IMG/VR virus record: IMGVR_UViG_3300032242_002454 | Location: 140,626 to 204,625 of that record | Direction: 5' to 3' (one strand) | DNA: 64,000 nt | Part shown: in pieces, positions 3,384 through 15,954 of the stretch | Position numbering within the stretch: the stretch's first letter is position 1 | Layout: every line of letters begins with the position of its first letter | Translations under genes and position numbers: made by a program | Notes under the pieces: generated by a model | Seen by the model: only the letters and a program-made list of their open reading frames with translations | What the model was told of the DNA's origin: nothing | Databases searched by the model: none

Positions 3384-4682
3384 ATGTCATTTGAGCATCT
3401 TAATGGTTTTGTTCGTGATCTGAAAGCAACTAGTAGTACACTTGATAAAGTTGGAATTATTGAGGATTATACCTCTTCCAATCAGGCTGGAGCAGATTTT
3501 ATCAAAAAGATTTTGCTCTATACTTATCATCCTCTTTGGCAGTATAATGTGACCAGCGATAATCTCAAAAAGAAATCTTCACTCAGAGGACAATCTTTTA
3601 AGACTGTTTTTGATTTGCTAGATTCTTTGAAGAACAGAGAAATCACAGGTCACGATGCTATTGGAGCAGTTAATACTTTTATTGACAATAATGGATACGA
3701 AGAACTCATCCACTGTATTATTGATAAGGATTTGAAAACCCGTGCTGGAGATAAGTTAATCAATAAGGCTATTCCAGATCACATTCCAACATTTAGCGTT
3801 GCATTAGCGGACAAGTATGTTCCTAAAATTGTAGACTGGAAGGATGGATGGTATGTTAGCAGGAAGATCGACGGTGCTAGATGTATTGCTATTGTTGACA
3901 GTAATGGTAATACTACCTTTTATTCCCGCACGGGAAAAAACTTTGATACTCTTGACGTTGTTAGCGGTGGGATTAAAGCTTTGGGACTTACTAATGTAAT
4001 TCTTGATGGAGAACTTTGTCTTGTTGATGAAGATGGTAATGAGGATTTTCAAGGAGTAATGAAAGAACTTCGCAAGAAGGATCATACTATTCCTAATCCT
4101 TCATATAAGATTTTTGATATGATTACTCATGATGAATTTTATAGTCAGAAGGGAGAACATAATAGACCCTTTGGTATCAGACTCAAGAATCTTACAGAAG
4201 TTATGAAAAAGAATGAATGTCCATGCCTAACACTATTGGATCAGTCCTTGATTAAGGACGAAAACCATTTTCAAGAATTTGTCAAAGAATCTACTCAGAA
4301 TGGTTGGGAGGGACTTATGCTTCGTGCAGATACTCCTTATAAGGGTAAGCGATCAAAAGACCTTCTCAAATATAAATCATTCTTTGATGACGAATATGAA
4401 GTTCTAGATACTGAAATGGGGCCGTTCCGCTATGTTAAAGATGGTGCAGAGTGCGAGGAGATTATGTTGAGTTGTGTTATGATTCAACATAAGGGTCATA
4501 CTGTCAGGGTTGGTTCTGGTTTTAGTATTGATCAAAGACAAGAGTTTTATAAGAATCCTAAGAAGATTTTGGGCAAAATAATTACTGTCCAATACTTTGA
4601 AGAAACAGAAAATGAAAAGGGTGGTATTAGCCTAAGATTTCCGACATTTAAAATTTTGCATGGGGATGAGAGGGATATTTGA
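3384..4682 (+). CDS. ATP-dependent DNA ligase
   Basis: KIDGAR adenylation motif, LDGEL, EGLMLR, LLKYK, VGSG, SLRFP; start after GGAG. Confidence 0.95.
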   Translation: MSFEHLNGFVRDLKATSSTLDKVGIIEDYTSSNQAGADFIKKILLYTYHPLWQYNVTSDNLKKKSSLRGQSFKTVFDLLDSLKNREITGHDAIGAVNTFIDNNGYEELIHCIIDKDLKTRAGDKLINKAIPDHIPTFSVALADKYVPKIVDWKDGWYVSRKIDGARCIAIVDSNGNTTFYSRTGKNFDTLDVVSGGIKALGLTNVILDGELCLVDEDGNEDFQGVMKELRKKDHTIPNPSYKIFDMITHDEFYSQKGEHNRPFGIRLKNLTEVMKKNECPCLTLLDQSLIKDENHFQEFVKESTQNGWEGLMLRADTPYKGKRSKDLLKYKSFFDDEYEVLDTEMGPFRYVKDGAECEEIMLSCVMIQHKGHTVRVGSGFSIDQRQEFYKNPKKILGKIITVQYFEETENEKGGISLRFPTFKILHGDERDI

Positions 4683-4739
4683 TTATTGGTTCCAATTAAG
4701 AGCGGTGTATAAAAATGTCCCGCCTCAAAGGAGCCTACC

Positions 4740-5165
4740 ATGCACAAGATTGTTATACGGTCAATTTTTTATCACTGGCTATTTTTATTTGTCGGTGTTG
4801 CTATAGGATTTATCTGCAACTCAGAATATGTTGGAGAAAAAGCTGTTGTTATAGAAAGATCAATTAATAATATCTTTTTCCCTATAGAATATAATGAGCA
4901 GATAGAAAATTATGTTAAATGGATGGGTAAAAATAGGATACATTCTGAATTAGGATATCCGCATGATTTTCAAATTCTTGAAGATGTTGTAAAGGGCGAG
5001 GAATATTATTGGGCTATAGCGAAATATACAGATGTAAAAACTGGACAAGAAATTAAAACTATAGTTAGTACAAAAATAAGATGGCGACCTTGGGAATATA
5101 ATTATCATACCAAGAAATTTGATAGCATCGTGGAAGAAAAAAGGCTAAGTCAGGATAAAAACTAA
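4740..5165 (+). CDS. membrane-anchored hypothetical protein
   Basis: N-terminal TM; GGAG RBS; GGTGTA at 4704. Confidence 0.7.
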   Translation: MHKIVIRSIFYHWLFLFVGVAIGFICNSEYVGEKAVVIERSINNIFFPIEYNEQIENYVKWMGKNRIHSELGYPHDFQILEDVVKGEEYYWAIAKYTDVKTGQEIKTIVSTKIRWRPWEYNYHTKKFDSIVEEKRLSQDKN

Positions 5166-8347: not shown

Positions 8348-8818
8348 ATGAAAAAATGTTTGAAATGCTCCAAAGAATTTAAGAACAGGGTTGTGATTGA
8401 TGGTGTTGAAAGGAATATACATAAAAGAAGTTATTGTTTAGAATGTTCCCCATTTGGAAAACGTAATACTAAAAGACTACATATTCCACCAAGAGATACG
8501 AATAGCACAAAACACTGTACAAAATGCAGTCGTAAGTTTAAATGGACAAAAAACAATGTATGTTCCACATGTAGGACATTTAAAAGAAGAAATAATCAAA
8601 GAATAAAGTCAATAGAATATCTTGGTGGTAAATGTACTGGCTGTGGAAATAAAGATCATGATGTTTTGACTTTTCACCATAAGAACCCTAAAAATAAAAA
8701 ATTTACCTTATGCCAAAGTTGGCACAGAGCTTGGAAAATACTTTTGTCAGAGATTAAAAAGTGCGAGCTACTTTGTGCTAATTGTCACATGAAACATCAC
8801 AGAAAAGAAATGCTATGA
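8348..8818 (+). CDS. free-standing HNH homing endonuclease with Zn fingers
   Basis: Multiple CxxC; LGGKC..C...FHHKNP...CELLCANCH. Confidence 0.88.
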   Translation: MKKCLKCSKEFKNRVVIDGVERNIHKRSYCLECSPFGKRNTKRLHIPPRDTNSTKHCTKCSRKFKWTKNNVCSTCRTFKRRNNQRIKSIEYLGGKCTGCGNKDHDVLTFHHKNPKNKKFTLCQSWHRAWKILLSEIKKCELLCANCHMKHHRKEML

Positions 8819-9036
8819 CATTCGACCACTGGCTAAATGAAATTGAAGGATATAGCGTTAGACACGAAAGAGCTATGACCGACATAAGAAACTGTGTTGC
8901 AAAAGGAGAAACTGACGATATAATTAAGTGGCTGATGGCAGCTTATGCTATGGGCCATGAACAGGGTTATGATGTTGGTCATTATGATGGTAAGAAAAAC
9001 TGCAAACAACATTTTGATGAATATGGATGGGTATAA
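8815..9036 (+). CDS. hypothetical protein
   Basis: ATGA-coupled ORF. Confidence 0.65.
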   Translation: MTFDHWLNEIEGYSVRHERAMTDIRNCVAKGETDDIIKWLMAAYAMGHEQGYDVGHYDGKKNCKQHFDEYGWV

Positions 9037-10087: not shown

Positions 10088-10609
10088 ATGATTAATAGTA
10101 AATACAAAATTGATTTATCTGATTTTTATAGTGATGACGGTGGGTATTGTACACTATTTAAATTGCTTAATGAGCCATCACTAGGATTCAAAGAATTCAT
10201 TTCCAAATCTAGAGCAAAATATGCTAGGAGAATTCAGATAAGACTAAGTAAACTTAATCTTGCACCAAAAGTATATTCTAGAGTATGCAAGATGACTTAT
10301 AATGGATTTTTTCCGGGCAAAAAAAGTGGTTGGGGATATGTCACAGAATTAGCTAAAACTGGAAATAAAAAAGTTAGATTATGCAATATACAGAGATTGG
10401 TTGATGTTATTTACGATAGAACAAAATTAAAATTTTGGGACTGTCATTGGGCTAATCTTGGATATATTATAAGAAAAGGCAAAAGAAAATTGGTTTGTAT
10501 TGATACTGGTAAAGAAACTTGGGATGGTTATGCTAATTATTTTGGAAATATTGATCCTGGCCCAAAGTGTTCGTATTGTTTAAAATATAAATGTAGGTGT
10601 GTAGAATAA
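10088..10609 (+). CDS. minimal protein-kinase-like protein
   Basis: GFK, LAPKVY, catalytic-loop-like DCHWANLG, DFG-like IDTG. Confidence 0.65.
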   Translation: MINSKYKIDLSDFYSDDGGYCTLFKLLNEPSLGFKEFISKSRAKYARRIQIRLSKLNLAPKVYSRVCKMTYNGFFPGKKSGWGYVTELAKTGNKKVRLCNIQRLVDVIYDRTKLKFWDCHWANLGYIIRKGKRKLVCIDTGKETWDGYANYFGNIDPGPKCSYCLKYKCRCVE

Positions 10610-11496
10610 TGAAATATCTTATAGCTGGTGGTGCTGGTTTTATAGGTAGTCATATTGCAGATACTCTTTTAGATATGGGTCATGATGTTATAATTATTGA
10701 TAATCTATCTACAGGAAAAAAAAGTAACATACCTAATAGAGCTACTTTTGTAGAATTAGATATAGCTAAATCTCCTATAGAAATTTTATCATCTTTTTTT
10801 GATGGAGTAACCGCAGTATTCCATTGTGCCGCATTACCCAATGTTCAGTTTTCTATAGAACAACCTTTGGATTCTAATAAAGCTAATGTAGATACTACTA
10901 TTAAAATTTTAGAGTCTATGAGAATCAAAAAAATTAAGAAGATTATATACAGCAGTTCTTGTTCTATATATGGAGATGCTATACAGATACCTACTACTGA
11001 AAATGAAACTATTAAACCATTAAGCCCATACGCTTTACAGAAATATATTGGAGAAGAATACTGTTCCCTTTATTATAGGCTTTACAATATAGAATATGTT
11101 GCTTTGCGTTATTTTAATGTATATGGTGAACGAATGACTGATACTGGAGCTTATGTTAGTGTATTGAGTCACTTTTTAAGAGCTTACAAAAATAATCAGC
11201 CGTTAAATATTACTAATACTGGAGAACAAAAAAGAGATTTTGTATATGTAAAAGACATAGCCAAAGCAAATGTTTTGGCTGCATTAAAAAATATTGGTGG
11301 TGAAACTATATTAAACTTAGGATCAGGTAATAACTATTCTATAAATTCTATTGCTAGTTGGTTTAATCATAATATTGTTTATGGAGAATCTAGAATAGAA
11401 CCATTTGAAACTTTAGCTGACATAAATAAAGCTAAAAATATATTGAATTGGTTACCAAAAGTAAATTTAAAATCATGGGTAATGCAAAATATTTAA
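10609..11496 (+). CDS. NAD-dependent epimerase/dehydratase (GalE-like)
   Basis: GGAGFIG, YALQK, RYFNVYG, RDFVYV. Confidence 0.95.
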   Translation: MKYLIAGGAGFIGSHIADTLLDMGHDVIIIDNLSTGKKSNIPNRATFVELDIAKSPIEILSSFFDGVTAVFHCAALPNVQFSIEQPLDSNKANVDTTIKILESMRIKKIKKIIYSSSCSIYGDAIQIPTTENETIKPLSPYALQKYIGEEYCSLYYRLYNIEYVALRYFNVYGERMTDTGAYVSVLSHFLRAYKNNQPLNITNTGEQKRDFVYVKDIAKANVLAALKNIGGETILNLGSGNNYSINSIASWFNHNIVYGESRIEPFETLADINKAKNILNWLPKVNLKSWVMQNI

Positions 11497-11506
11497 GGAA
11501 ATTATA

Positions 11507-11857
11507 ATGCCATATATTAAAGAAGAAAATAGACTTACTCTTGATGAATGTATTGATCATATGGTGGTTTGTTTGAAAAATAGTGCTTTCAGAGCATCAT
11601 TTGATCCAAATAAAAATAATTATATGAAGGAAGAACTAAGTAATGAAGATGTTTTAGCTATAGTTGGAGATATTAATTACTGTATTTCTCGTGTTGTTTC
11701 TAAGCTAATGGGCAAGGTATCGTATTCTAAAATAGCAATGATTACAGGAGTATTAGAAAATATAAAGCAAGAGTTTTATCGTAGAATTGGTGTATCTTTA
11801 GAAGATAAGAAAATTATAGAAAATGGAGATATACCAGAATACAAAAGGTTATGCTAA
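11507..11857 (+). CDS. conserved phage hypothetical protein
   Basis: MPYIK...GDINY...EFYRR...ENGD. Confidence 0.75.
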   Translation: MPYIKEENRLTLDECIDHMVVCLKNSAFRASFDPNKNNYMKEELSNEDVLAIVGDINYCISRVVSKLMGKVSYSKIAMITGVLENIKQEFYRRIGVSLEDKKIIENGDIPEYKRLC

Positions 11858-12570
11858 AAAACACAAAAAAGAATGATTATTCATTAATCTCAAAAAAAGA
11901 ACTAGAAAAATTATTAAATGAAGGATTGAATTTTACAGAAATAGGTTCTCTTTATGGTAGAAATCTGCACTATATTAGAACGATATGTAAAAAATACAAT
12001 CTTAAAATTAAATCAAAGGCGACTGTCTGTTTAAACTGTCAAAAAAAGTTTAAGCATAAAGCAACCATCCCAGCCAAATACTGTTCCACAAAATGTCGAT
12101 CTGCACATTGGCCAAAAATAAATAAAGAAAAGCATAAAGAATTAGTTAAAAAATCTAGATTTAAGTGTCATCCAGTAAAATGCAGAAAATGTAACAATAA
12201 TATATCAGATAATAATAGAAAATCTGGTTTGGTTTACTGTAGTGATTTATGTAGAAAACAGAATAAGACGATATCTGATAAACAAAGTCGAGATAAAAAA
12301 TATAAACAATTTGGTCTTTACAAAATATCTATAGGATGTCAAAATTGCGGATATAATAAATGTTCTGGTTCTTTAGATTTTCATCATGTCAATCCACAAA
12401 CAAAATCGACTAGAATAAGCTGTGGACTCTGGAAAGCTAATACTGAAGTATTTCAAAAAGAACTGTTAAAATGTATATTACTATGTAAAAATTGTCATTA
12501 TGAAGCACATAATCAGATTCTTATTATAGAAGGAAATGAAGGACAATGGAATTGTATATACCAAAATTAA
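11851..12570 (+). CDS. free-standing HNH homing endonuclease
   Basis: HTH-like N-term, CxxC/CSxxC, GCQNCG...DFHHVNP...CILLCKNCH; same family as 8348. Confidence 0.88.
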   Translation: MLKNTKKNDYSLISKKELEKLLNEGLNFTEIGSLYGRNLHYIRTICKKYNLKIKSKATVCLNCQKKFKHKATIPAKYCSTKCRSAHWPKINKEKHKELVKKSRFKCHPVKCRKCNNNISDNNRKSGLVYCSDLCRKQNKTISDKQSRDKKYKQFGLYKISIGCQNCGYNKCSGSLDFHHVNPQTKSTRISCGLWKANTEVFQKELLKCILLCKNCHYEAHNQILIIEGNEGQWNCIYQN

Positions 12571-12580
12571 AGGTGTATAA

Positions 12581-12625
12581 ATTATTAAGAATGGCGATAT
12601 TAAAGAGTATAAACGCCTAAAATAA
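12581..12625 (+). pseudogene. displaced duplicate 3' end of gene 11507..11857
   Basis: Encodes IIKNGDIKEYKRLK* vs IIENGDIPEYKRLC* at 11813-11857. Confidence 0.85.
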
Positions 12626-12635
12626 AGAGGCCAAA

Positions 12636-12947
12636 ATGTCTAAAAATATTGATGATGTAATTAAAGAGGTAATGAAAAGCAATAAGGAGATTCATACTAT
12701 GGACGCTCATATCTCTAAAGACATTACCGATCTAAAAAAGAGCATCAAAAATATTGAGAATAAGATCAAAATGATAGATAATAAAATGGATCAAACCATA
12801 GATCTATTAAATACTTTCATTACTCTTATTACTGAACAGGATGATATAGATCTTGATGATGAAGAAGAGAATGAGGATTGGACTCCTTATGATCAACAAG
12901 AAGATTATCAAGCTGATGATGAAGATGAGGAAGAAGAACAATACTAA
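12636..12947 (+). CDS. coiled-coil protein with acidic tail
   Basis: GAGG RBS; GGTGTA at 12572. Confidence 0.75.
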   Translation: MSKNIDDVIKEVMKSNKEIHTMDAHISKDITDLKKSIKNIENKIKMIDNKMDQTIDLLNTFITLITEQDDIDLDDEEENEDWTPYDQQEDYQADDEDEEEEQY

Positions 12948-13198
12948 TGGCTAGTTTAGCTCTACTAGTAACAATAATTTTTTTATCTGTGCTAATAATA
13001 GGTCCAATTAGTTATATTCTATCATTATTTTCTTGGATGCCAAATTTAATCAAATGGATAATGGCAATAGTTTGTATTTTTGTTGGGGGTTGGGTTTGTT
13101 TTCTACCTATACCCTTTTTAAGAGCTTTGGGATTAATTGATATAGCAATAGGATTAAAGATCATATCGGATAGCACACAAAAGAAAAGTGATGCTTGA
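12947..13198 (+). CDS. multi-TM membrane protein
   Basis: Three hydrophobic segments. Confidence 0.7.
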   Translation: MASLALLVTIIFLSVLIIGPISYILSLFSWMPNLIKWIMAIVCIFVGGWVCFLPIPFLRALGLIDIAIGLKIISDSTQKKSDA

Positions 13199-13223
13199 CA
13201 AGACCGTATGCCGATGGTATACT
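13195..13223 (+). promoter_or_regulatory. sigma70-type promoter for rIIA
   Basis: TTGACA-N17-TATACT, GCCGAT in spacer. Confidence 0.88.
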
Positions 13224-13263
13224 TGAGCCATCACAGGAACGATAACACTTTTGGAGAATAAAG

Positions 13264-15954
13264 ATGAAGTTGGCAGATAGGACGATTGAGACTCACAGCG
13301 TTGGTGTTGCAAGTAGGAACCAATTCAATATCGCTCAGACGAGCAAGATGTTTAAAATCCTTTCAGACTCTCTTTATTCTGATAAGGTAATGGCAGCAAT
13401 TCGTGAGCTTTCTACTAATGCTTATGATAGTCATATCTCTGCTGGGAATAGGAATCCTTTTAAGGTTACTCTGCCCACCGCTGCTAATCCTACCTTTATG
13501 GTGAGAGATTATGGTACTGGTCTTAGTCAGGCCGATATGGAGGACTTGTATACAACTTATGGTGCCTCAAACAAAAATGATAGCAATGATTTTGTTGGTT
13601 GTCTTGGTCTAGGGTCTAAGAGTCCGTTTGCCTACACCAAGAGCTTCACCACTGCATCATATTACAATGGTAAGAAATATACCTATATTGCAGCAATTGA
13701 TGAGAGTGGTGTTCCTACTCTGAATCTTTTTAATACTGCCGAAACATCTGAGCCTAATGGTCTTGAGATTAGTTTTGCTGTTAAGCAGCATGACTTTCAA
13801 GAGTTCACCGATAAGGCTAAGAGAATTTTCCACTACTTCCGAATGAAACCCATCATTGAGGGTGGTGTTGGTGGTAATCTTATGGATCATAAGTATAGCA
13901 ATACCAATATCGTTATTAGTGGTGAGGGTTGGAGAGTTTGCCGACTCAATAATGATAACAGTTATTTTCCCAGCAATTATCATCGAATTGATAGTGGTAT
14001 CATCGCTATCATGGGAAATATTGCGTATCCTGTTCAAACCGCACAGATTGTTGGTCAAGAAAAGGAAGAAATGCCCGACCATATTCAGAAGTGGAATAGG
14101 GCTTTCCAGAAAGCAGATATTGATTCTTGGAAGAGTTTTGTGGGAGAGATTCTTAACTCTGGTCTTTATCTTGAACTGGATTTTGGTATCGGTGAACTTG
14201 AGATGGACGTTAGCCGCGAAGGTTTGCAGTATACCAAGGATGTAATTAAGGCTCTTCGTAAAAAGACCCAAGAAATTTACATGGAGATGAAGGAAGAATT
14301 CTCCAAGAAAATTCAAGCATCCAAGACCAAGGTAGAAGCAATTACTTCATATTATACTATGAATGAATTGGCTGGCGGCTGGGGTGTTGGTGCCACTTGG
14401 ACTGATCCCAAGGGTAAAGATCATCCGATCAATTCTGGAAATGATTTGGAATATAAAATTCCGGCTGGCAAGAGTCTGTATGTTTTTAACTATAAGACTG
14501 CTGGCTATCGTTCTCGTCGTCAAGTTGCTTTGACAGATAAGATTCATCACGAAACTCTTACTGGTAAAGGTTCTTACTATTGGAATAACCAGAGGAAGAA
14601 AGGCACGATGGCTTTCTTTATCTGTGACGTTAAGGGTGAAGAAACAGCAAAGAAGATCATCACAAAGTATTGCAATAGTAATGATTGTTTTGCCTACTTG
14701 ATGCTTGATACTAAGGACTATACCAAGAGTGGAGAAGGTTTTGATAAGCTGATCGAAGATGTTGGATCTGAAAATCTGCTCAAGGTTTCAGACTACAAAC
14801 ATCTTACTCAAAGTTCTGGCCCAAGAAAGTCTTACAATAGAAATTCTAATGGTAGTGTTAGTGATCAAGACGTATTCTTTATTCATGGCTATGATGATGA
14901 TAGTAAGCAGATTACTAATCCTTATAACGATGCTACTTGTCTAAGAATTCTTTCAGAAGAACAACTGGAAGATTTTCTAGAGCAGGATGAGATAGTGTAC
15001 GTTCCTATGCTTCGATATAAGACTGAGGCTGAATCCGGTCATCCTGAGATTAGTGATATTACCACTACTCTTGGTGATGATAGCTTGAAGTTTATAGTCA
15101 AGGATTTGCTGGGAGATAGTAAGATTTATGCTATCAAAAACGCTTTTGTTAAAAAGCTTCAAAATGATGGGTATAATCTTGTCAGTTTTAATGAATTCTT
15201 TAAGCGTCAGTTGAAGATTGTTGCTCAGAAACATTTTTCAAGTTTGGCTTCTTTCAATGATCTTGTTGAGTTCTGTAAGAAAGAATATGCAAGCGAAGAA
15301 CATAAGAACAACCAATATAGATATTATAATCATGGAACTATGGATAAACAGTTCATGTTTCATATGTTGAATATCTTTGGGTTGAATTATGAAAAGTTTA
15401 TTGGTAGTAAGACTCTGGTTGAGTGCATAGACACTACTATGCTTATGGAATTCTTTGCTAATACTGTTCATGATAATAACTTTAGGATTGAAAGATTTTC
15501 TCAATCAGATTATTTCTCTCATATCTCAAGGTTAATGGACAAGGTTAATATCCGATCAGTAGACAGTAAAGATATTCGTAAGGCTAGTTTGGCTTACAAT
15601 GTCTTGACTAGTCTGATTAGTGGATCACTTTATACTGGATCTAATTCTCATAAAGCTGAAACTTATCTGAAAATTATTAAGGGTGAGTCTAAGGAAAACT
15701 TTAAACTACCAGCAATCTCTAAGATTAGAGAGAGTGTCAGAACTGAACTTGATAAGAACCCTATGCTAAAGTATATTCTTGGTAGTCATCAAGTTACTGG
15801 AACTCTTACTGATCTAAGAGCTAAGAAGAATCCTATTAATCAGCTTGATGAACGTCATTCCTATTATAATAATGATGGTAAGGATTGGATCATGCAGATG
15901 AGCCAAGAGAATATTGACCTATTTAGAATTCAGTTGAGTAGTTTAGTCAAGTAG
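13264..15954 (+). CDS. rIIA: rIIA-like protein (N-terminal GHKL ATPase)
   Basis: LYSDK..AIRELSTNAYDSH, VRDYGTG, GLGSKSPFAY, SREGL; followed by rIIB. Confidence 0.92.
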   Translation: MKLADRTIETHSVGVASRNQFNIAQTSKMFKILSDSLYSDKVMAAIRELSTNAYDSHISAGNRNPFKVTLPTAANPTFMVRDYGTGLSQADMEDLYTTYGASNKNDSNDFVGCLGLGSKSPFAYTKSFTTASYYNGKKYTYIAAIDESGVPTLNLFNTAETSEPNGLEISFAVKQHDFQEFTDKAKRIFHYFRMKPIIEGGVGGNLMDHKYSNTNIVISGEGWRVCRLNNDNSYFPSNYHRIDSGIIAIMGNIAYPVQTAQIVGQEKEEMPDHIQKWNRAFQKADIDSWKSFVGEILNSGLYLELDFGIGELEMDVSREGLQYTKDVIKALRKKTQEIYMEMKEEFSKKIQASKTKVEAITSYYTMNELAGGWGVGATWTDPKGKDHPINSGNDLEYKIPAGKSLYVFNYKTAGYRSRRQVALTDKIHHETLTGKGSYYWNNQRKKGTMAFFICDVKGEETAKKIITKYCNSNDCFAYLMLDTKDYTKSGEGFDKLIEDVGSENLLKVSDYKHLTQSSGPRKSYNRNSNGSVSDQDVFFIHGYDDDSKQITNPYNDATCLRILSEEQLEDFLEQDEIVYVPMLRYKTEAESGHPEISDITTTLGDDSLKFIVKDLLGDSKIYAIKNAFVKKLQNDGYNLVSFNEFFKRQLKIVAQKHFSSLASFNDLVEFCKKEYASEEHKNNQYRYYNHGTMDKQFMFHMLNIFGLNYEKFIGSKTLVECIDTTMLMEFFANTVHDNNFRIERFSQSDYFSHISRLMDKVNIRSVDSKDIRKASLAYNVLTSLISGSLYTGSNSHKAETYLKIIKGESKENFKLPAISKIRESVRTELDKNPMLKYILGSHQVTGTLTDLRAKKNPINQLDERHSYYNNDGKDWIMQMSQENIDLFRIQLSSLVK

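What the first reader, a model, noticed from the sequence alone, without database searches (positions are those of the whole stretch)
11789..12625. Homing endonuclease insertion replaced a host gene's 3' end and left the old end behind
Seen: gene 11507..11857 ends IIENGDIPEYKRLC* (11813-11857). Just after the HNH gene, 12581-12625 encodes IIKNGDIKEYKRLK*, the same length but diverged in DNA. Both copies are preceded by GGTGTA. The codon differences in the upstream copy (GGA GAT ATA CCA vs GGC GAT ATT AAA) are what create the regulatory hairpin. Inference: the element carries a recoded gene end that restores the target, confers cleavage immunity and supplies its own control. This predicts the cut site lies near this segment.
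Basis: partly seen in the sequence, partly recalled or inferred. Interest (0 to 1): 0.65.

Follow-up and report, generated by a model that had tools for sequence, protein, structure and literature searches.

The report
Phage homing endonuclease carrying spare gene end
A selfish HNH nuclease gene sits inside the 3' end of a small phage gene (DUF6899), brings its own replacement end for that gene and leaves the old end as an untranslated stub; this layout was known from fungal mitochondria, and I found no description of it in phages.

Summary
Gene 11507-11857 (DUF6899) ends IIENGDIPEYKRLC*, and 12581-12625 reads IIKNGDIKEYKRLK*. The two copies share 30 of 45 bases. The downstream copy matches the true gene end of HNH-less relatives at 39-41 of 45 bases and then continues into their downstream sequence.

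In about 100 related loci, every allele with the variant end (GV.L...C*, or ...EYG.LQ*) is followed by this HNH gene, intact or decayed. None of 76 HNH-less loci has the variant end or a second copy.

The cassette, about 11717/11780 to 12611, is about 94% identical between genomes whose DUF6899 proteins are only 58% identical. One close pair, L017 and L052, shows a clean replacement of the last 26 codons.

The stub and its junction (GGTGTAT + TTATTGAG) recur in several HNH lineages. The 3' part of the stub follows the local background. In distant relatives the HNH reading frame itself ends with a copy of the DUF6899 end.

This is an old, site-specific family of homing endonuclease genes that replaces a gene end. 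The predicted hairpin is real but shows no covariation and does not cover the ribosome-binding site. Cleavage immunity and the cut site remain untested. The downstream GGTGTA belongs to a recurrent intergenic motif.

The parts
11507..11857 (+). Host gene: DUF6899 protein, 116 aa. A small three-helix protein of unknown function, lying upstream of rIIA.
   Evidence: Pfam PF21840, E 8e-23. 677 homologs found. AF2 model with pLDDT 79, three helices, no PDB match.
11717..11779 (+). Tract co-inherited with the cassette. It codes the conserved SYSKIAMITGVLENIKQEFY segment and carries synonymous variants shared by HNH+ alleles.
   Evidence: Identity to L082 and L097 rises from about 20-60% to over 80% per 30 nt from 11717 onward.
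11780..11857 (+). Replacement gene end carried by the element: the last 26 codons, RRIGVSLEDKKIIENGDIPEYKRLC*.
   Evidence: In the L017/L052 pair, identity breaks exactly after the EFY codons. Every allele with this type of end is followed by the HNH gene.
11787..11837 (+). Predicted RNA hairpin. Its arms, 11787-11800 and 11824-11837, are the two recoded blocks (GVSL and GDIP).
   Evidence: -18.2 kcal/mol, z = -5.3. A four-codon swap gives -6.1. 85.7% of cells pair in 10 HNH+ alleles, but there are no compensatory changes.
11851..11857 (+). ATGCTAA: the HNH start codon overlaps the last Cys codon and the stop of DUF6899.
   Evidence: Variants elsewhere are CGATGTTAA (L020), TCATGA (L157) and a 17-nt overlap in the EYG.LQ class.
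11851..12570 (+). HNH homing endonuclease gene, 239 aa: N-terminal helix-turn-helix, two CxxC...YCSxxC zinc modules, and a C-terminal HNH domain.
   Evidence: PHROG HNH families, E 4e-14. Invariant C163, C166, D176, H178, H179, C212, N214, C215 and H216. AF2 model with pLDDT 90; weak fold matches to HTH domains (Z 5-6) and to the TagI/VcaM4I HNH domain (Z 4.2).
12572..12582 (+). GGTGTATAAAT: a copy of a recurrent intergenic, promoter-like motif, lying between the HNH stop and the stub.
   Evidence: GGTGTATA occurs 7 times on the + strand and once on the - strand of the genome. Six of the seven lie 20-65 nt upstream of an ATG. HNH-less L009 and L068 have it directly after the DUF6899 stop.
12579..12625 (+). 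Displaced original end of DUF6899: (K)IIKNGDIKEYKRLK*. It is untranslated and preceded by an in-frame TAA.
   Evidence: 39-41 of 45 nt match the ends of HNH-less relatives. BLAST homology to L002 and L010 begins here. The same junction is seen in L082, L093, L096-98, L099, L102-104, L106 and L109.
12636..12947 (+). Next gene (103 aa). It is not part of the element. In HNH-less genomes it follows the DUF6899 stop by about 10 nt.

Best explanation
A free-standing HNH homing endonuclease gene is lodged inside the 3' end of the phage gene DUF6899. It has no intron or intein.

Layout. The mobile unit runs from the Arg-Arg codons at about 11780 to the junction at about 12578. It contains three things:
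- its own copy of the last 26 codons of DUF6899, so the host protein is completed and terminated;
- the HNH gene, whose ATG is built into the last codons of that copy, giving coupled or re-initiated translation;
- a promoter-like GGTGTATAAAT motif for the next gene.

The old gene end, 12579-12625, stays downstream as an untranslated stub.

Inferred mechanism. In a mixed infection the enzyme cuts HNH-less alleles in or next to the roughly 33-nt stretch (codons RRVAxPYEDKK) that no HNH+ genome retains. The break is then repaired from the HNH+ genome. The left end pairs in the conserved body of the gene. The right end pairs with the stub, which therefore acts as the downstream homology arm and is renewed from each recipient.

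The recoded blocks (Gly-Val-x-Leu and Ile-Pro) probably spoil the recognition site in the resident copy. They also pair with each other as an RNA hairpin of unknown role.

Shown: the architecture, the linkage, the mosaic distribution and the decay stages.
Inferred: cleavage, its position, immunity and any function of the hairpin.
For: Linkage. All alleles with GV.L...C* or ...EYG.LQ* ends are followed by this HNH gene or its wreck: the window, L017/18, L020-24, L082, L093, L096-98, L099-104, L106-109 and L157. 76 HNH-less loci have ordinary ends and a single copy.

Mobility. HNH is 94% identical between the window and L082 while their DUF6899 proteins are 58% identical, and identity per 30 nt jumps at about 11717. 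On a tree of the 5' part of DUF6899, the HNH+ label needs 10 changes, at least 6 of them forced by well-supported branches.

Before-and-after pair. L017 and L052 have flanks 92% and 95% identical. Only the last 26 codons plus the HNH gene differ, and identity resumes at the ATG of the next gene.

Stub. It matches HNH-less ends at 39-41 of 45 nt. The same junction occurs in several HNH lineages, while the stub's 3' part follows the local background: KKNS*GGTGTATAT in L093 as in L009, and KRLKA* in L097.

Decay cycle. The HNH gene is frameshifted in L096 and broken several times in L102-104, and their stubs are decaying.

Deep conservation. HNH relatives at 36-48% identity also sit behind DUF6899 genes that are 30-38% identical. 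In 6 of 9 of these the HNH reading frame ends with a significant copy of the DUF6899 end.

No intron. Rfam finds nothing in this region.
Against:
- The adjacency is conserved so deeply that a functional partnership between HNH and DUF6899 cannot be excluded.
- The resident copy differs from naive alleles only at a few diagnostic positions. Some HNH-less alleles already carry ATA CCA (L019, L036, L039) or Leu (L023), so immunity may not rest on these changes.
- Some HNH+ lineages (L017, L020-24, L157) have no stub, so the stub is not required for the element to persist.
- Pfam's HNH model scores only E = 1.9, and the fold matches are weak.
Confidence: 0.8

Rival explanations
1. An ordinary intergenic homing endonuclease gene with hitch-hiking flanks. 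The HNH gene first sat between the DUF6899 stop and a GGTGTATA promoter in one lineage. Its variant gene end is simply that lineage's natural allele, dragged along by co-conversion. The stub comes from a single illegitimate joint. On this view the enzyme's target may lie elsewhere, and neither recoding nor the stub has a role.
For: HNH-less L009 and L068 have GGTGTATA directly after the stop. L068's end...DIREYKRLQ, resembles the HNH-linked ...DIREYGRLQ. The junction GGTGTAT + TTATTGAG is the same in all stub-bearing loci, as one event would give. The hairpin shows no covariation.
Against: The GV.L block stays linked to the HNH gene across lineages whose HNH proteins are only 58-62% identical, although crossovers occur right beside it. 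Distant relatives independently carry a copy of the DUF6899 end fused to the HNH C-terminus. The L017/L052 break falls exactly at the start of the variant end.
Confidence: 0.15
2. The HNH protein is a domesticated partner of DUF6899, for example a two-gene module, rather than a mobile element. On this view the duplicated ends are remnants of old gene shuffling.
For: The HNH-DUF6899 adjacency is kept down to 30-38% DUF6899 identity. The start codon overlaps the upstream gene, which suggests coupled expression.
Against: Presence and absence vary between genomes with 92-95% identical flanks. Most relatives lack the HNH gene (76 loci). Some copies are frameshifted or shattered. The distribution on the gene tree is mosaic.
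Confidence: 0.04
3. The similarity of the two 45-nt stretches is chance, or an assembly artefact.
For: The two copies share only 30 of 45 nt, in an AT-rich genome.
Against: The stub is 39-41 of 45 nt identical to real gene ends in other assemblies, and it is contiguous with their downstream sequence. The same arrangement appears in independent assemblies from JGI, ENA and Logan.
Confidence: 0.01

Closest known systems
Mobile endonuclease ORFs (mORFs) that make 'gene hybrids' in fungal mitochondria: Allomyces macrogynus atp6; Glomus atp6, atp9, cox2 and nad3 (Beaudet et al. 2013, PMC3630166, which cites Paquin et al. 1994)
   Same: An endonuclease ORF is inserted in the 3' part of a gene and brings a foreign C-terminal copy that completes the gene. 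The native C-terminus stays downstream. That native copy is closer to endonuclease-free relatives than the inserted copy is. Here the figures are 39-41 of 45 versus 31-33 of 45.
   Different: The host is a phage, not a mitochondrion. The enzyme is HNH, not LAGLIDADG or GIY-YIG. In the window the endonuclease ORF is not in phase with the host gene: it overlaps the stop by 7 nt in another frame. The stub is only 15 codons. In distant relatives the old end is in phase with the endonuclease itself.
Free-standing homing endonucleases of T4-like phages and 'intronless homing' (SegF, SegG, MobE; review by Edgell et al. 2010, PMC2988022)
   Same: Both involve a T4-like genome, an HNH or zinc-finger endonuclease between conserved genes, and presence/absence polymorphism with co-conversion of flanks. 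In both, the start codon overlaps the upstream ORF (mobE UAAUGA; segC, segF, mobA and mobC overlap by 11-24 nt). Promoters for the downstream gene are carried by the cassette, and RNA hairpins lie near the endonuclease start. The seg43(25) hairpin lies just upstream of the ribosome-binding site without covering it.
   Different: The T4 cassettes lie between intact genes or split a gene into two working pieces. That review does not use the word 'duplicat' at all, so it describes no duplicated gene end. Here the insertion point lies inside the coding sequence, and function is kept by substitution.
Intron- or intein-borne homing endonucleases
   Same: The element sits inside a coding sequence at the presumed target site, and the host gene stays functional.
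   Different: There is no splicing. No Rfam group I or group II intron is found. The HNH gene is not in frame with the host protein, so it is not an intein.

Membership tests
HNH (His-Me finger) homing endonuclease, free-standing | HNH catalytic core with zinc-binding CxxC pairs | tested here: met
   PHROG HNH families 2255 and 3106, E about 1e-14. Invariant C163, C166, D176, H178, H179, C212, N214, C215 and H216 in 24 homologs. Fold match of residues 154-239 to the TagI/VcaM4I HNH domain is weak, Z 4.2. Pfam HNH scores only E 1.9.
HNH (His-Me finger) homing endonuclease, free-standing | Present or absent at one fixed site among otherwise collinear relatives | tested here: met
   76 loci lack it and about 25 loci have it, always directly after DUF6899. 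The L017/L052 flanks are 92-95% identical.
HNH (His-Me finger) homing endonuclease, free-standing | Horizontal spread: the element's phylogeny disagrees with that of the host gene | tested here: met
   HNH is 94% identical where DUF6899 is 58% identical, window versus L082. The HNH+ label needs 10 changes on the tree of the 5' part.
HNH (His-Me finger) homing endonuclease, free-standing | Degeneration stage of the homing cycle | tested here: met
   L096 is frameshifted and L102-104 are broken several times, yet all keep the variant gene end.
HNH (His-Me finger) homing endonuclease, free-standing | Site-specific cleavage of the allele that lacks the endonuclease, and resistance of the allele that carries it | not testable with these tools
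   Only diagnostic substitutions can be listed: GCN..TAY becomes GGT GTA ..YTA, and ATT AAA becomes ATA CCA.
mORF-type gene hybrid (C-terminal replacement), as in fungal mitochondria | The element-borne C-terminal copy completes the host gene in frame | tested here: met
   The ORF 11507-11857 is full length, 116 aa like its relatives, and covers the whole Pfam model.
mORF-type gene hybrid (C-terminal replacement), as in fungal mitochondria | The native C-terminus is retained downstream and is closer to endonuclease-free relatives than the inserted copy is | tested here: met
   39-41 of 45 versus 31-33 of 45 nt. Not all lineages keep it: it is absent in L017, L020-24 and L157.
mORF-type gene hybrid (C-terminal replacement), as in fungal mitochondria | Endonuclease ORF in phase with the upstream host gene (Allomyces and Glomus atp6) | tested here: not met
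   The HNH gene is in another frame and overlaps by 7 nt. In distant relatives the HNH gene is in phase with the old end downstream instead.
Group I/II intron or intein carrying the endonuclease | Ribozyme structure, or an in-frame intein with splicing blocks | tested here: not met
   No Rfam family reaches threshold in 11000-13300. A stop codon separates the host gene from the HNH gene.

The most novel reading that the evidence does not exclude
The stub is not a fossil but a working part. On this reading, this HNH family invades a coding sequence without an intron or intein by carrying a spare gene end on its left and keeping the displaced end on its right as the homology arm that abuts the cut. 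The two recoded blocks serve twice: they spoil the target in the resident copy, and they form a hairpin that tunes endonuclease expression. This would be a third general way, besides introns and inteins, for homing endonuclease genes to live inside phage genes.
Probability: 0.35. Interest if true: 0.7.

Novelty: new variant of a known kind. Interest (0 to 1): 0.58.

Why it matters
The element shows how a homing endonuclease gene can occupy a target inside a protein-coding gene in a phage without a self-splicing carrier: it brings a substitute gene end. This links the 'intronless homing' of T4-like phages with the mitochondrial mORF gene hybrids.

It also gives a natural series of stages: naive alleles, fresh insertions, decaying stubs, dead endonucleases and in-frame fusions. 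From these the recognition site can be narrowed to about 33 nt and tested directly.

There is a practical warning for annotation. Short gene-end duplicates next to HNH genes are footprints of such elements. The C-terminal variation of small phage proteins may be driven by the parasite rather than by the protein's function.

Tried and rejected
- The HNH C-terminus (…IIEGNEGQWNCIYQN) as an older fused copy of the DUF6899 end. Local alignment scores are no better than shuffles in 6 of 7 proteins; P0130 is marginal at 0.07. Rejected for this clade, though it holds for distant relatives.
- GGTGTAT as a target-site duplication. Rejected: the two copies lie at different distances from the repeats, and the downstream one belongs to a motif found upstream of other genes.
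- The 12-nt direct repeat ATATACCARAAT flanking the HNH gene. Other 12-mers at 92% identity occur in the same 1.4 kb, so this is at chance level.
- Covariation support for the hairpin. None: no pair has changes on both sides.
- Intrinsic terminator or sigma-70 promoter signals. No terminator was found, and promoter-like hits are at the shuffle level.
- Intron or other known RNA. None found.
- Function of DUF6899 by fold. No PDB match at E <= 0.001. No paper mentions DUF6899.
- Close relatives among deposited phage genomes. None found: only remote hits in RsoM2USA, CRP-7 and an uncultured phage.
It was rerun from stored references.
- Literature searches found no phage case of a duplicated gene end carried by an endonuclease. 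The library is incomplete, so this is not proof of absence.

Full report
**Setting.** The window lies in a 204,625-bp virus record with direct terminal repeats. The phage is T4-like: rIIA is at 13264-15954, and the genome is 34% G+C. No close relative exists among deposited phage genomes. Many related contigs exist in IMG/VR and in metagenome assemblies.

**The observation.**
- Gene 11507-11857 encodes a 116-aa DUF6899 protein (Pfam PF21840, E 8e-23) that ends IIENGDIPEYKRLC*.
- The next gene, 11851-12570, is an HNH endonuclease (PHROG HNH families, E about 1e-14). Its ATG overlaps the DUF6899 stop (ATGCTAA).
- Ten bases after the HNH stop, 12581-12625 reads IIKNGDIKEYKRLK*, preceded by an in-frame TAA.
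- The two 45-nt stretches share 30 bases.
- The downstream copy matches the true gene end of HNH-less relatives (L002, L010, L004, L062, L058) at 39-41 of 45 bases. It runs on into the same downstream sequence, AGAGGCCAAAATG, and the next gene, with 87-95 of the next 100 bases identical.

The duplication is therefore real, and the downstream copy is the ancestral end.

**Linkage with the endonuclease.** I examined 80 viral loci and 120 proteins related to DUF6899. The gene ends fall into classes.
- The common class...RRVAxxYEDKKIxENGDIKEYKRLK*, is never followed by the HNH gene. The next gene starts about 10 nt after the stop.
- The class ...RR[IV]GV[SCN]LE...ENGDIPEYK..C* is always followed by a homolog of this HNH gene at 58-97% identity.
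- A third class...GVNLE...DIREYG[RK]LQ*, is followed by a 232-aa HNH protein 62% identical to this one. Its ATG lies inside the Tyr-Gly codons, giving a 17-nt overlap.
- The terminal Cys of the second class exists because TGY supplies the TG of the HNH start codon. Variants are TTATGCTAA, CGATGTTAA and, in L157, TCATGA.
- None of the 76 HNH-less loci has a second copy of the end.

**Mobility.**
- The window and L082 have HNH proteins 94% identical but DUF6899 proteins only 58% identical.
- Per 30 nt, identity is 20-60% over 11537-11716 and 80-100% from 11717 to about 12611.
- On a maximum-likelihood tree of the 5' part of DUF6899 (58 distinct rows), the 15 HNH+ rows need 10 changes of state, at least 6 of them forced by well-supported branches. 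Several HNH+ alleles sit next to nearly identical HNH-less ones.
- The cleanest pair is L017 (HNH+) and L052 (HNH-). Their flanks are 92.4% identical over 1096 nt and 95.5% over 3284 nt. The sequences are identical for 60 nt up to the EFY codons, differ through the last 26 codons plus the HNH gene, and become identical again exactly at the ATG of the next gene.
- Decay stages exist. The HNH gene is frameshifted in L096 and broken several times in L102-104, and all four keep the variant end.

Together this is the usual signature of a homing endonuclease gene: fixed site, patchy presence, mosaic flanks and degeneration.

**The stub is part of the architecture.**
- The junction GGT(G/A)TATAA(A)T followed by (T)TATTGAGAATGG recurs in L082, L093, L096-98 and L102-104. 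It is also found, more decayed, in the 62% HNH lineage (L099, L106) and the 60% lineage (L109).
- The 3' part of the stub follows the local background. L093 has ...KKNS* followed by GGTGTATAT..., exactly like the real end of HNH-less L009. L097 has ...KRLKA*. The window has ...KRLK*AGAGGCC, like L002 and L010.
- BLAST homology to HNH-less relatives starts 46-55 nt before their stop.
- Other lineages (L017/L108, L020-24, L157) have no stub.

I read this as one old joint that has since served as the right-hand region of exchange, so the stub is refreshed from recipients. It decays where the element has been resident for long, and it can be deleted.

**Deep conservation.** More distant HNH relatives (36-48% identity), found in metagenome contigs, also lie directly behind distant DUF6899 genes (30-38% identity). 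In 6 of 9 of these loci the HNH reading frame itself ends with a significant copy of the DUF6899 end. For example, in L112 the gene ends ...DRKIVENGDVFS* and the HNH protein ends ...EKILEDGDVFA*, with shuffle fractions of 0.017 or less. L125 has three copies. Insertion into the end of this gene, with duplication of that end, is thus a trait of the whole HNH family.

**GGTGTA.** The downstream GGTGTA is the start of GGTGTATAAAT. In the whole genome GGTGTATA occurs 7 times on the + strand and once on the - strand. Six of the seven lie just after a stop codon and 20-65 nt before the next ATG. HNH-less L009 and L068 have the motif immediately after the DUF6899 stop. It is most simply a promoter-like signal for the next gene, carried by the cassette, as the T4 review describes for seg and mob cassettes (PMC2988022). 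The upstream GGTGTA encodes Gly-Val of the variant end. The shared hexamer is not a mark of the duplication, because the two copies lie 18 and 3 nt from the repeats.

**Hairpin.**
- 11787-11800 pairs with 11824-11837 at -18.2 kcal/mol, z = -5.3, with 0 of 200 shuffles as stable. The naive allele of L010 gives z = 0.2.
- The arms are exactly the two blocks in which HNH-linked ends differ from naive ones. Replacing the four codons 11825-11836 with the stub's version gives -6.1 kcal/mol.
- HNH-linked ends fold better than naive ends, mean -11.7 versus -7.4 kcal/mol, Mann-Whitney p = 0.001, not corrected for relatedness.
- Among 10 distinct HNH+ ends, 85.7% of cells pair, against 33-64% in slid controls. 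No pair shows a compensatory change. L017, L082 and the 62% lineage favour a different stem, UCUAGAA/UUCUAGA.
- The hairpin ends 6 nt before the AAAAGG and 13 nt before the ATG. It lies inside the translated DUF6899 frame.

The nearest precedent is the seg43(25) hairpin just upstream of, and not covering, the ribosome-binding site.

**Where the cut may be (inference).** The only naive sequence with no close counterpart in stub-bearing HNH+ loci is the roughly 33 nt between the left break (the RR codons) and the start of the stub (K|II). This is the stretch coding RRVAxPYEDKK. In the resident copy it is replaced by ...IGVSLEDKK. The most constant diagnostic changes are:
- Tyr (TAY) to Leu (YTA), in 12 of 12 distinct HNH+ ends, against 41 of 43 naive ends that keep TAY;
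- Ala to Gly-Val;
- Lys/Arg to Pro/Arg at ATA CCA.

Exceptions exist: naive L023 has Leu, and L019, L036 and L039 have Pro. No assay was possible.

**The proteins.**
- The HNH model has pLDDT 90. It shows an N-terminal three-helix DNA-binding domain, with weak matches to resolvase- and LuxR-type HTH domains (Z 5-6). It has two CxxC...YCSxxC zinc modules and a C-terminal HNH domain, matched to TagI/VcaM4I at Z 4.2. The catalytic and zinc residues are invariant in 24 homologs.
- The family is rare: 67 proteins at E < 1e-5 among 5.8 billion.
- DUF6899 folds as three long helices with a low-confidence tail and has no PDB match. Its function is unknown.

**Comparison with known systems.** The same layout (inserted C-terminus, endonuclease ORF, native C-terminus left downstream and closer to endonuclease-free relatives) is described for fungal mitochondrial mORFs: Allomyces atp6 and Glomus atp6, atp9, cox2 and nad3 (PMC3630166). 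In phages, free-standing endonucleases and intronless homing are well known (PMC2988022; PMC10448857). My searches found no phage case of a carried replacement gene end, though the library is incomplete. I file this as a new variant of a known kind.

**Limits.** All evidence is comparative. There are no reads, transcripts or enzymology. Metagenome contigs may be chimeric, but the arrangement recurs in independent assemblies from three sources.

Noticed in passing
window 4704, 6328, 12572, 29533, 38679 (+ strand): GGTGTATA recurs just after stop codons and 20-65 nt upstream of the next ATG. In the whole genome it occurs 7 times on the + strand and once on the - strand. It is probably a phage promoter element of unknown class.
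   Followed up: partly
window 8354-8833 (+): A second, weak relative of the HNH protein (30% identity, E 9e-5) with one in-frame TGA, about 2.7 kb upstream of DUF6899. Many related loci also have an HNH-like hit 1.6-2.5 kb upstream.
   Followed up: no
L063, L065, L067, about 4340-4840: Here DUF6899 has an ordinary end. It is followed by a tRNA-like sequence and then a different HNH gene (37% identity), so this is another endonuclease at the same intergenic position.
   Followed up: no
L125 658-1603: Three successive ORFs (DUF6899, HNH and a 79-aa ORF) each end with a copy of ...ENGDV(Y/W). This may reflect nested insertions at one site.
   Followed up: partly
L019 about 1880-1910: This HNH-less allele ends ...GAT ATA CCA GAA TAC AAA AGG, identical to the HNH-linked end up to that point, then AGA AGC TAATG, which runs into the next gene. 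It may be the footprint of a lost endonuclease.
   Followed up: no
window 10597-11496 versus related loci: The nucleotide-sugar epimerase gene upstream of DUF6899 is present in only a few relatives (L010, L069). Most have a 172-175-aa ORF there, so the neighbourhood is itself mosaic.
   Followed up: no
window 12555-12582: The last HNH codons (TATATACC) can pair with the GGTGTATA that follows the stop, giving an 8-bp stem with the stop codon in the loop. The fold of 12555-12645 has z = -3.1.
   Followed up: partly
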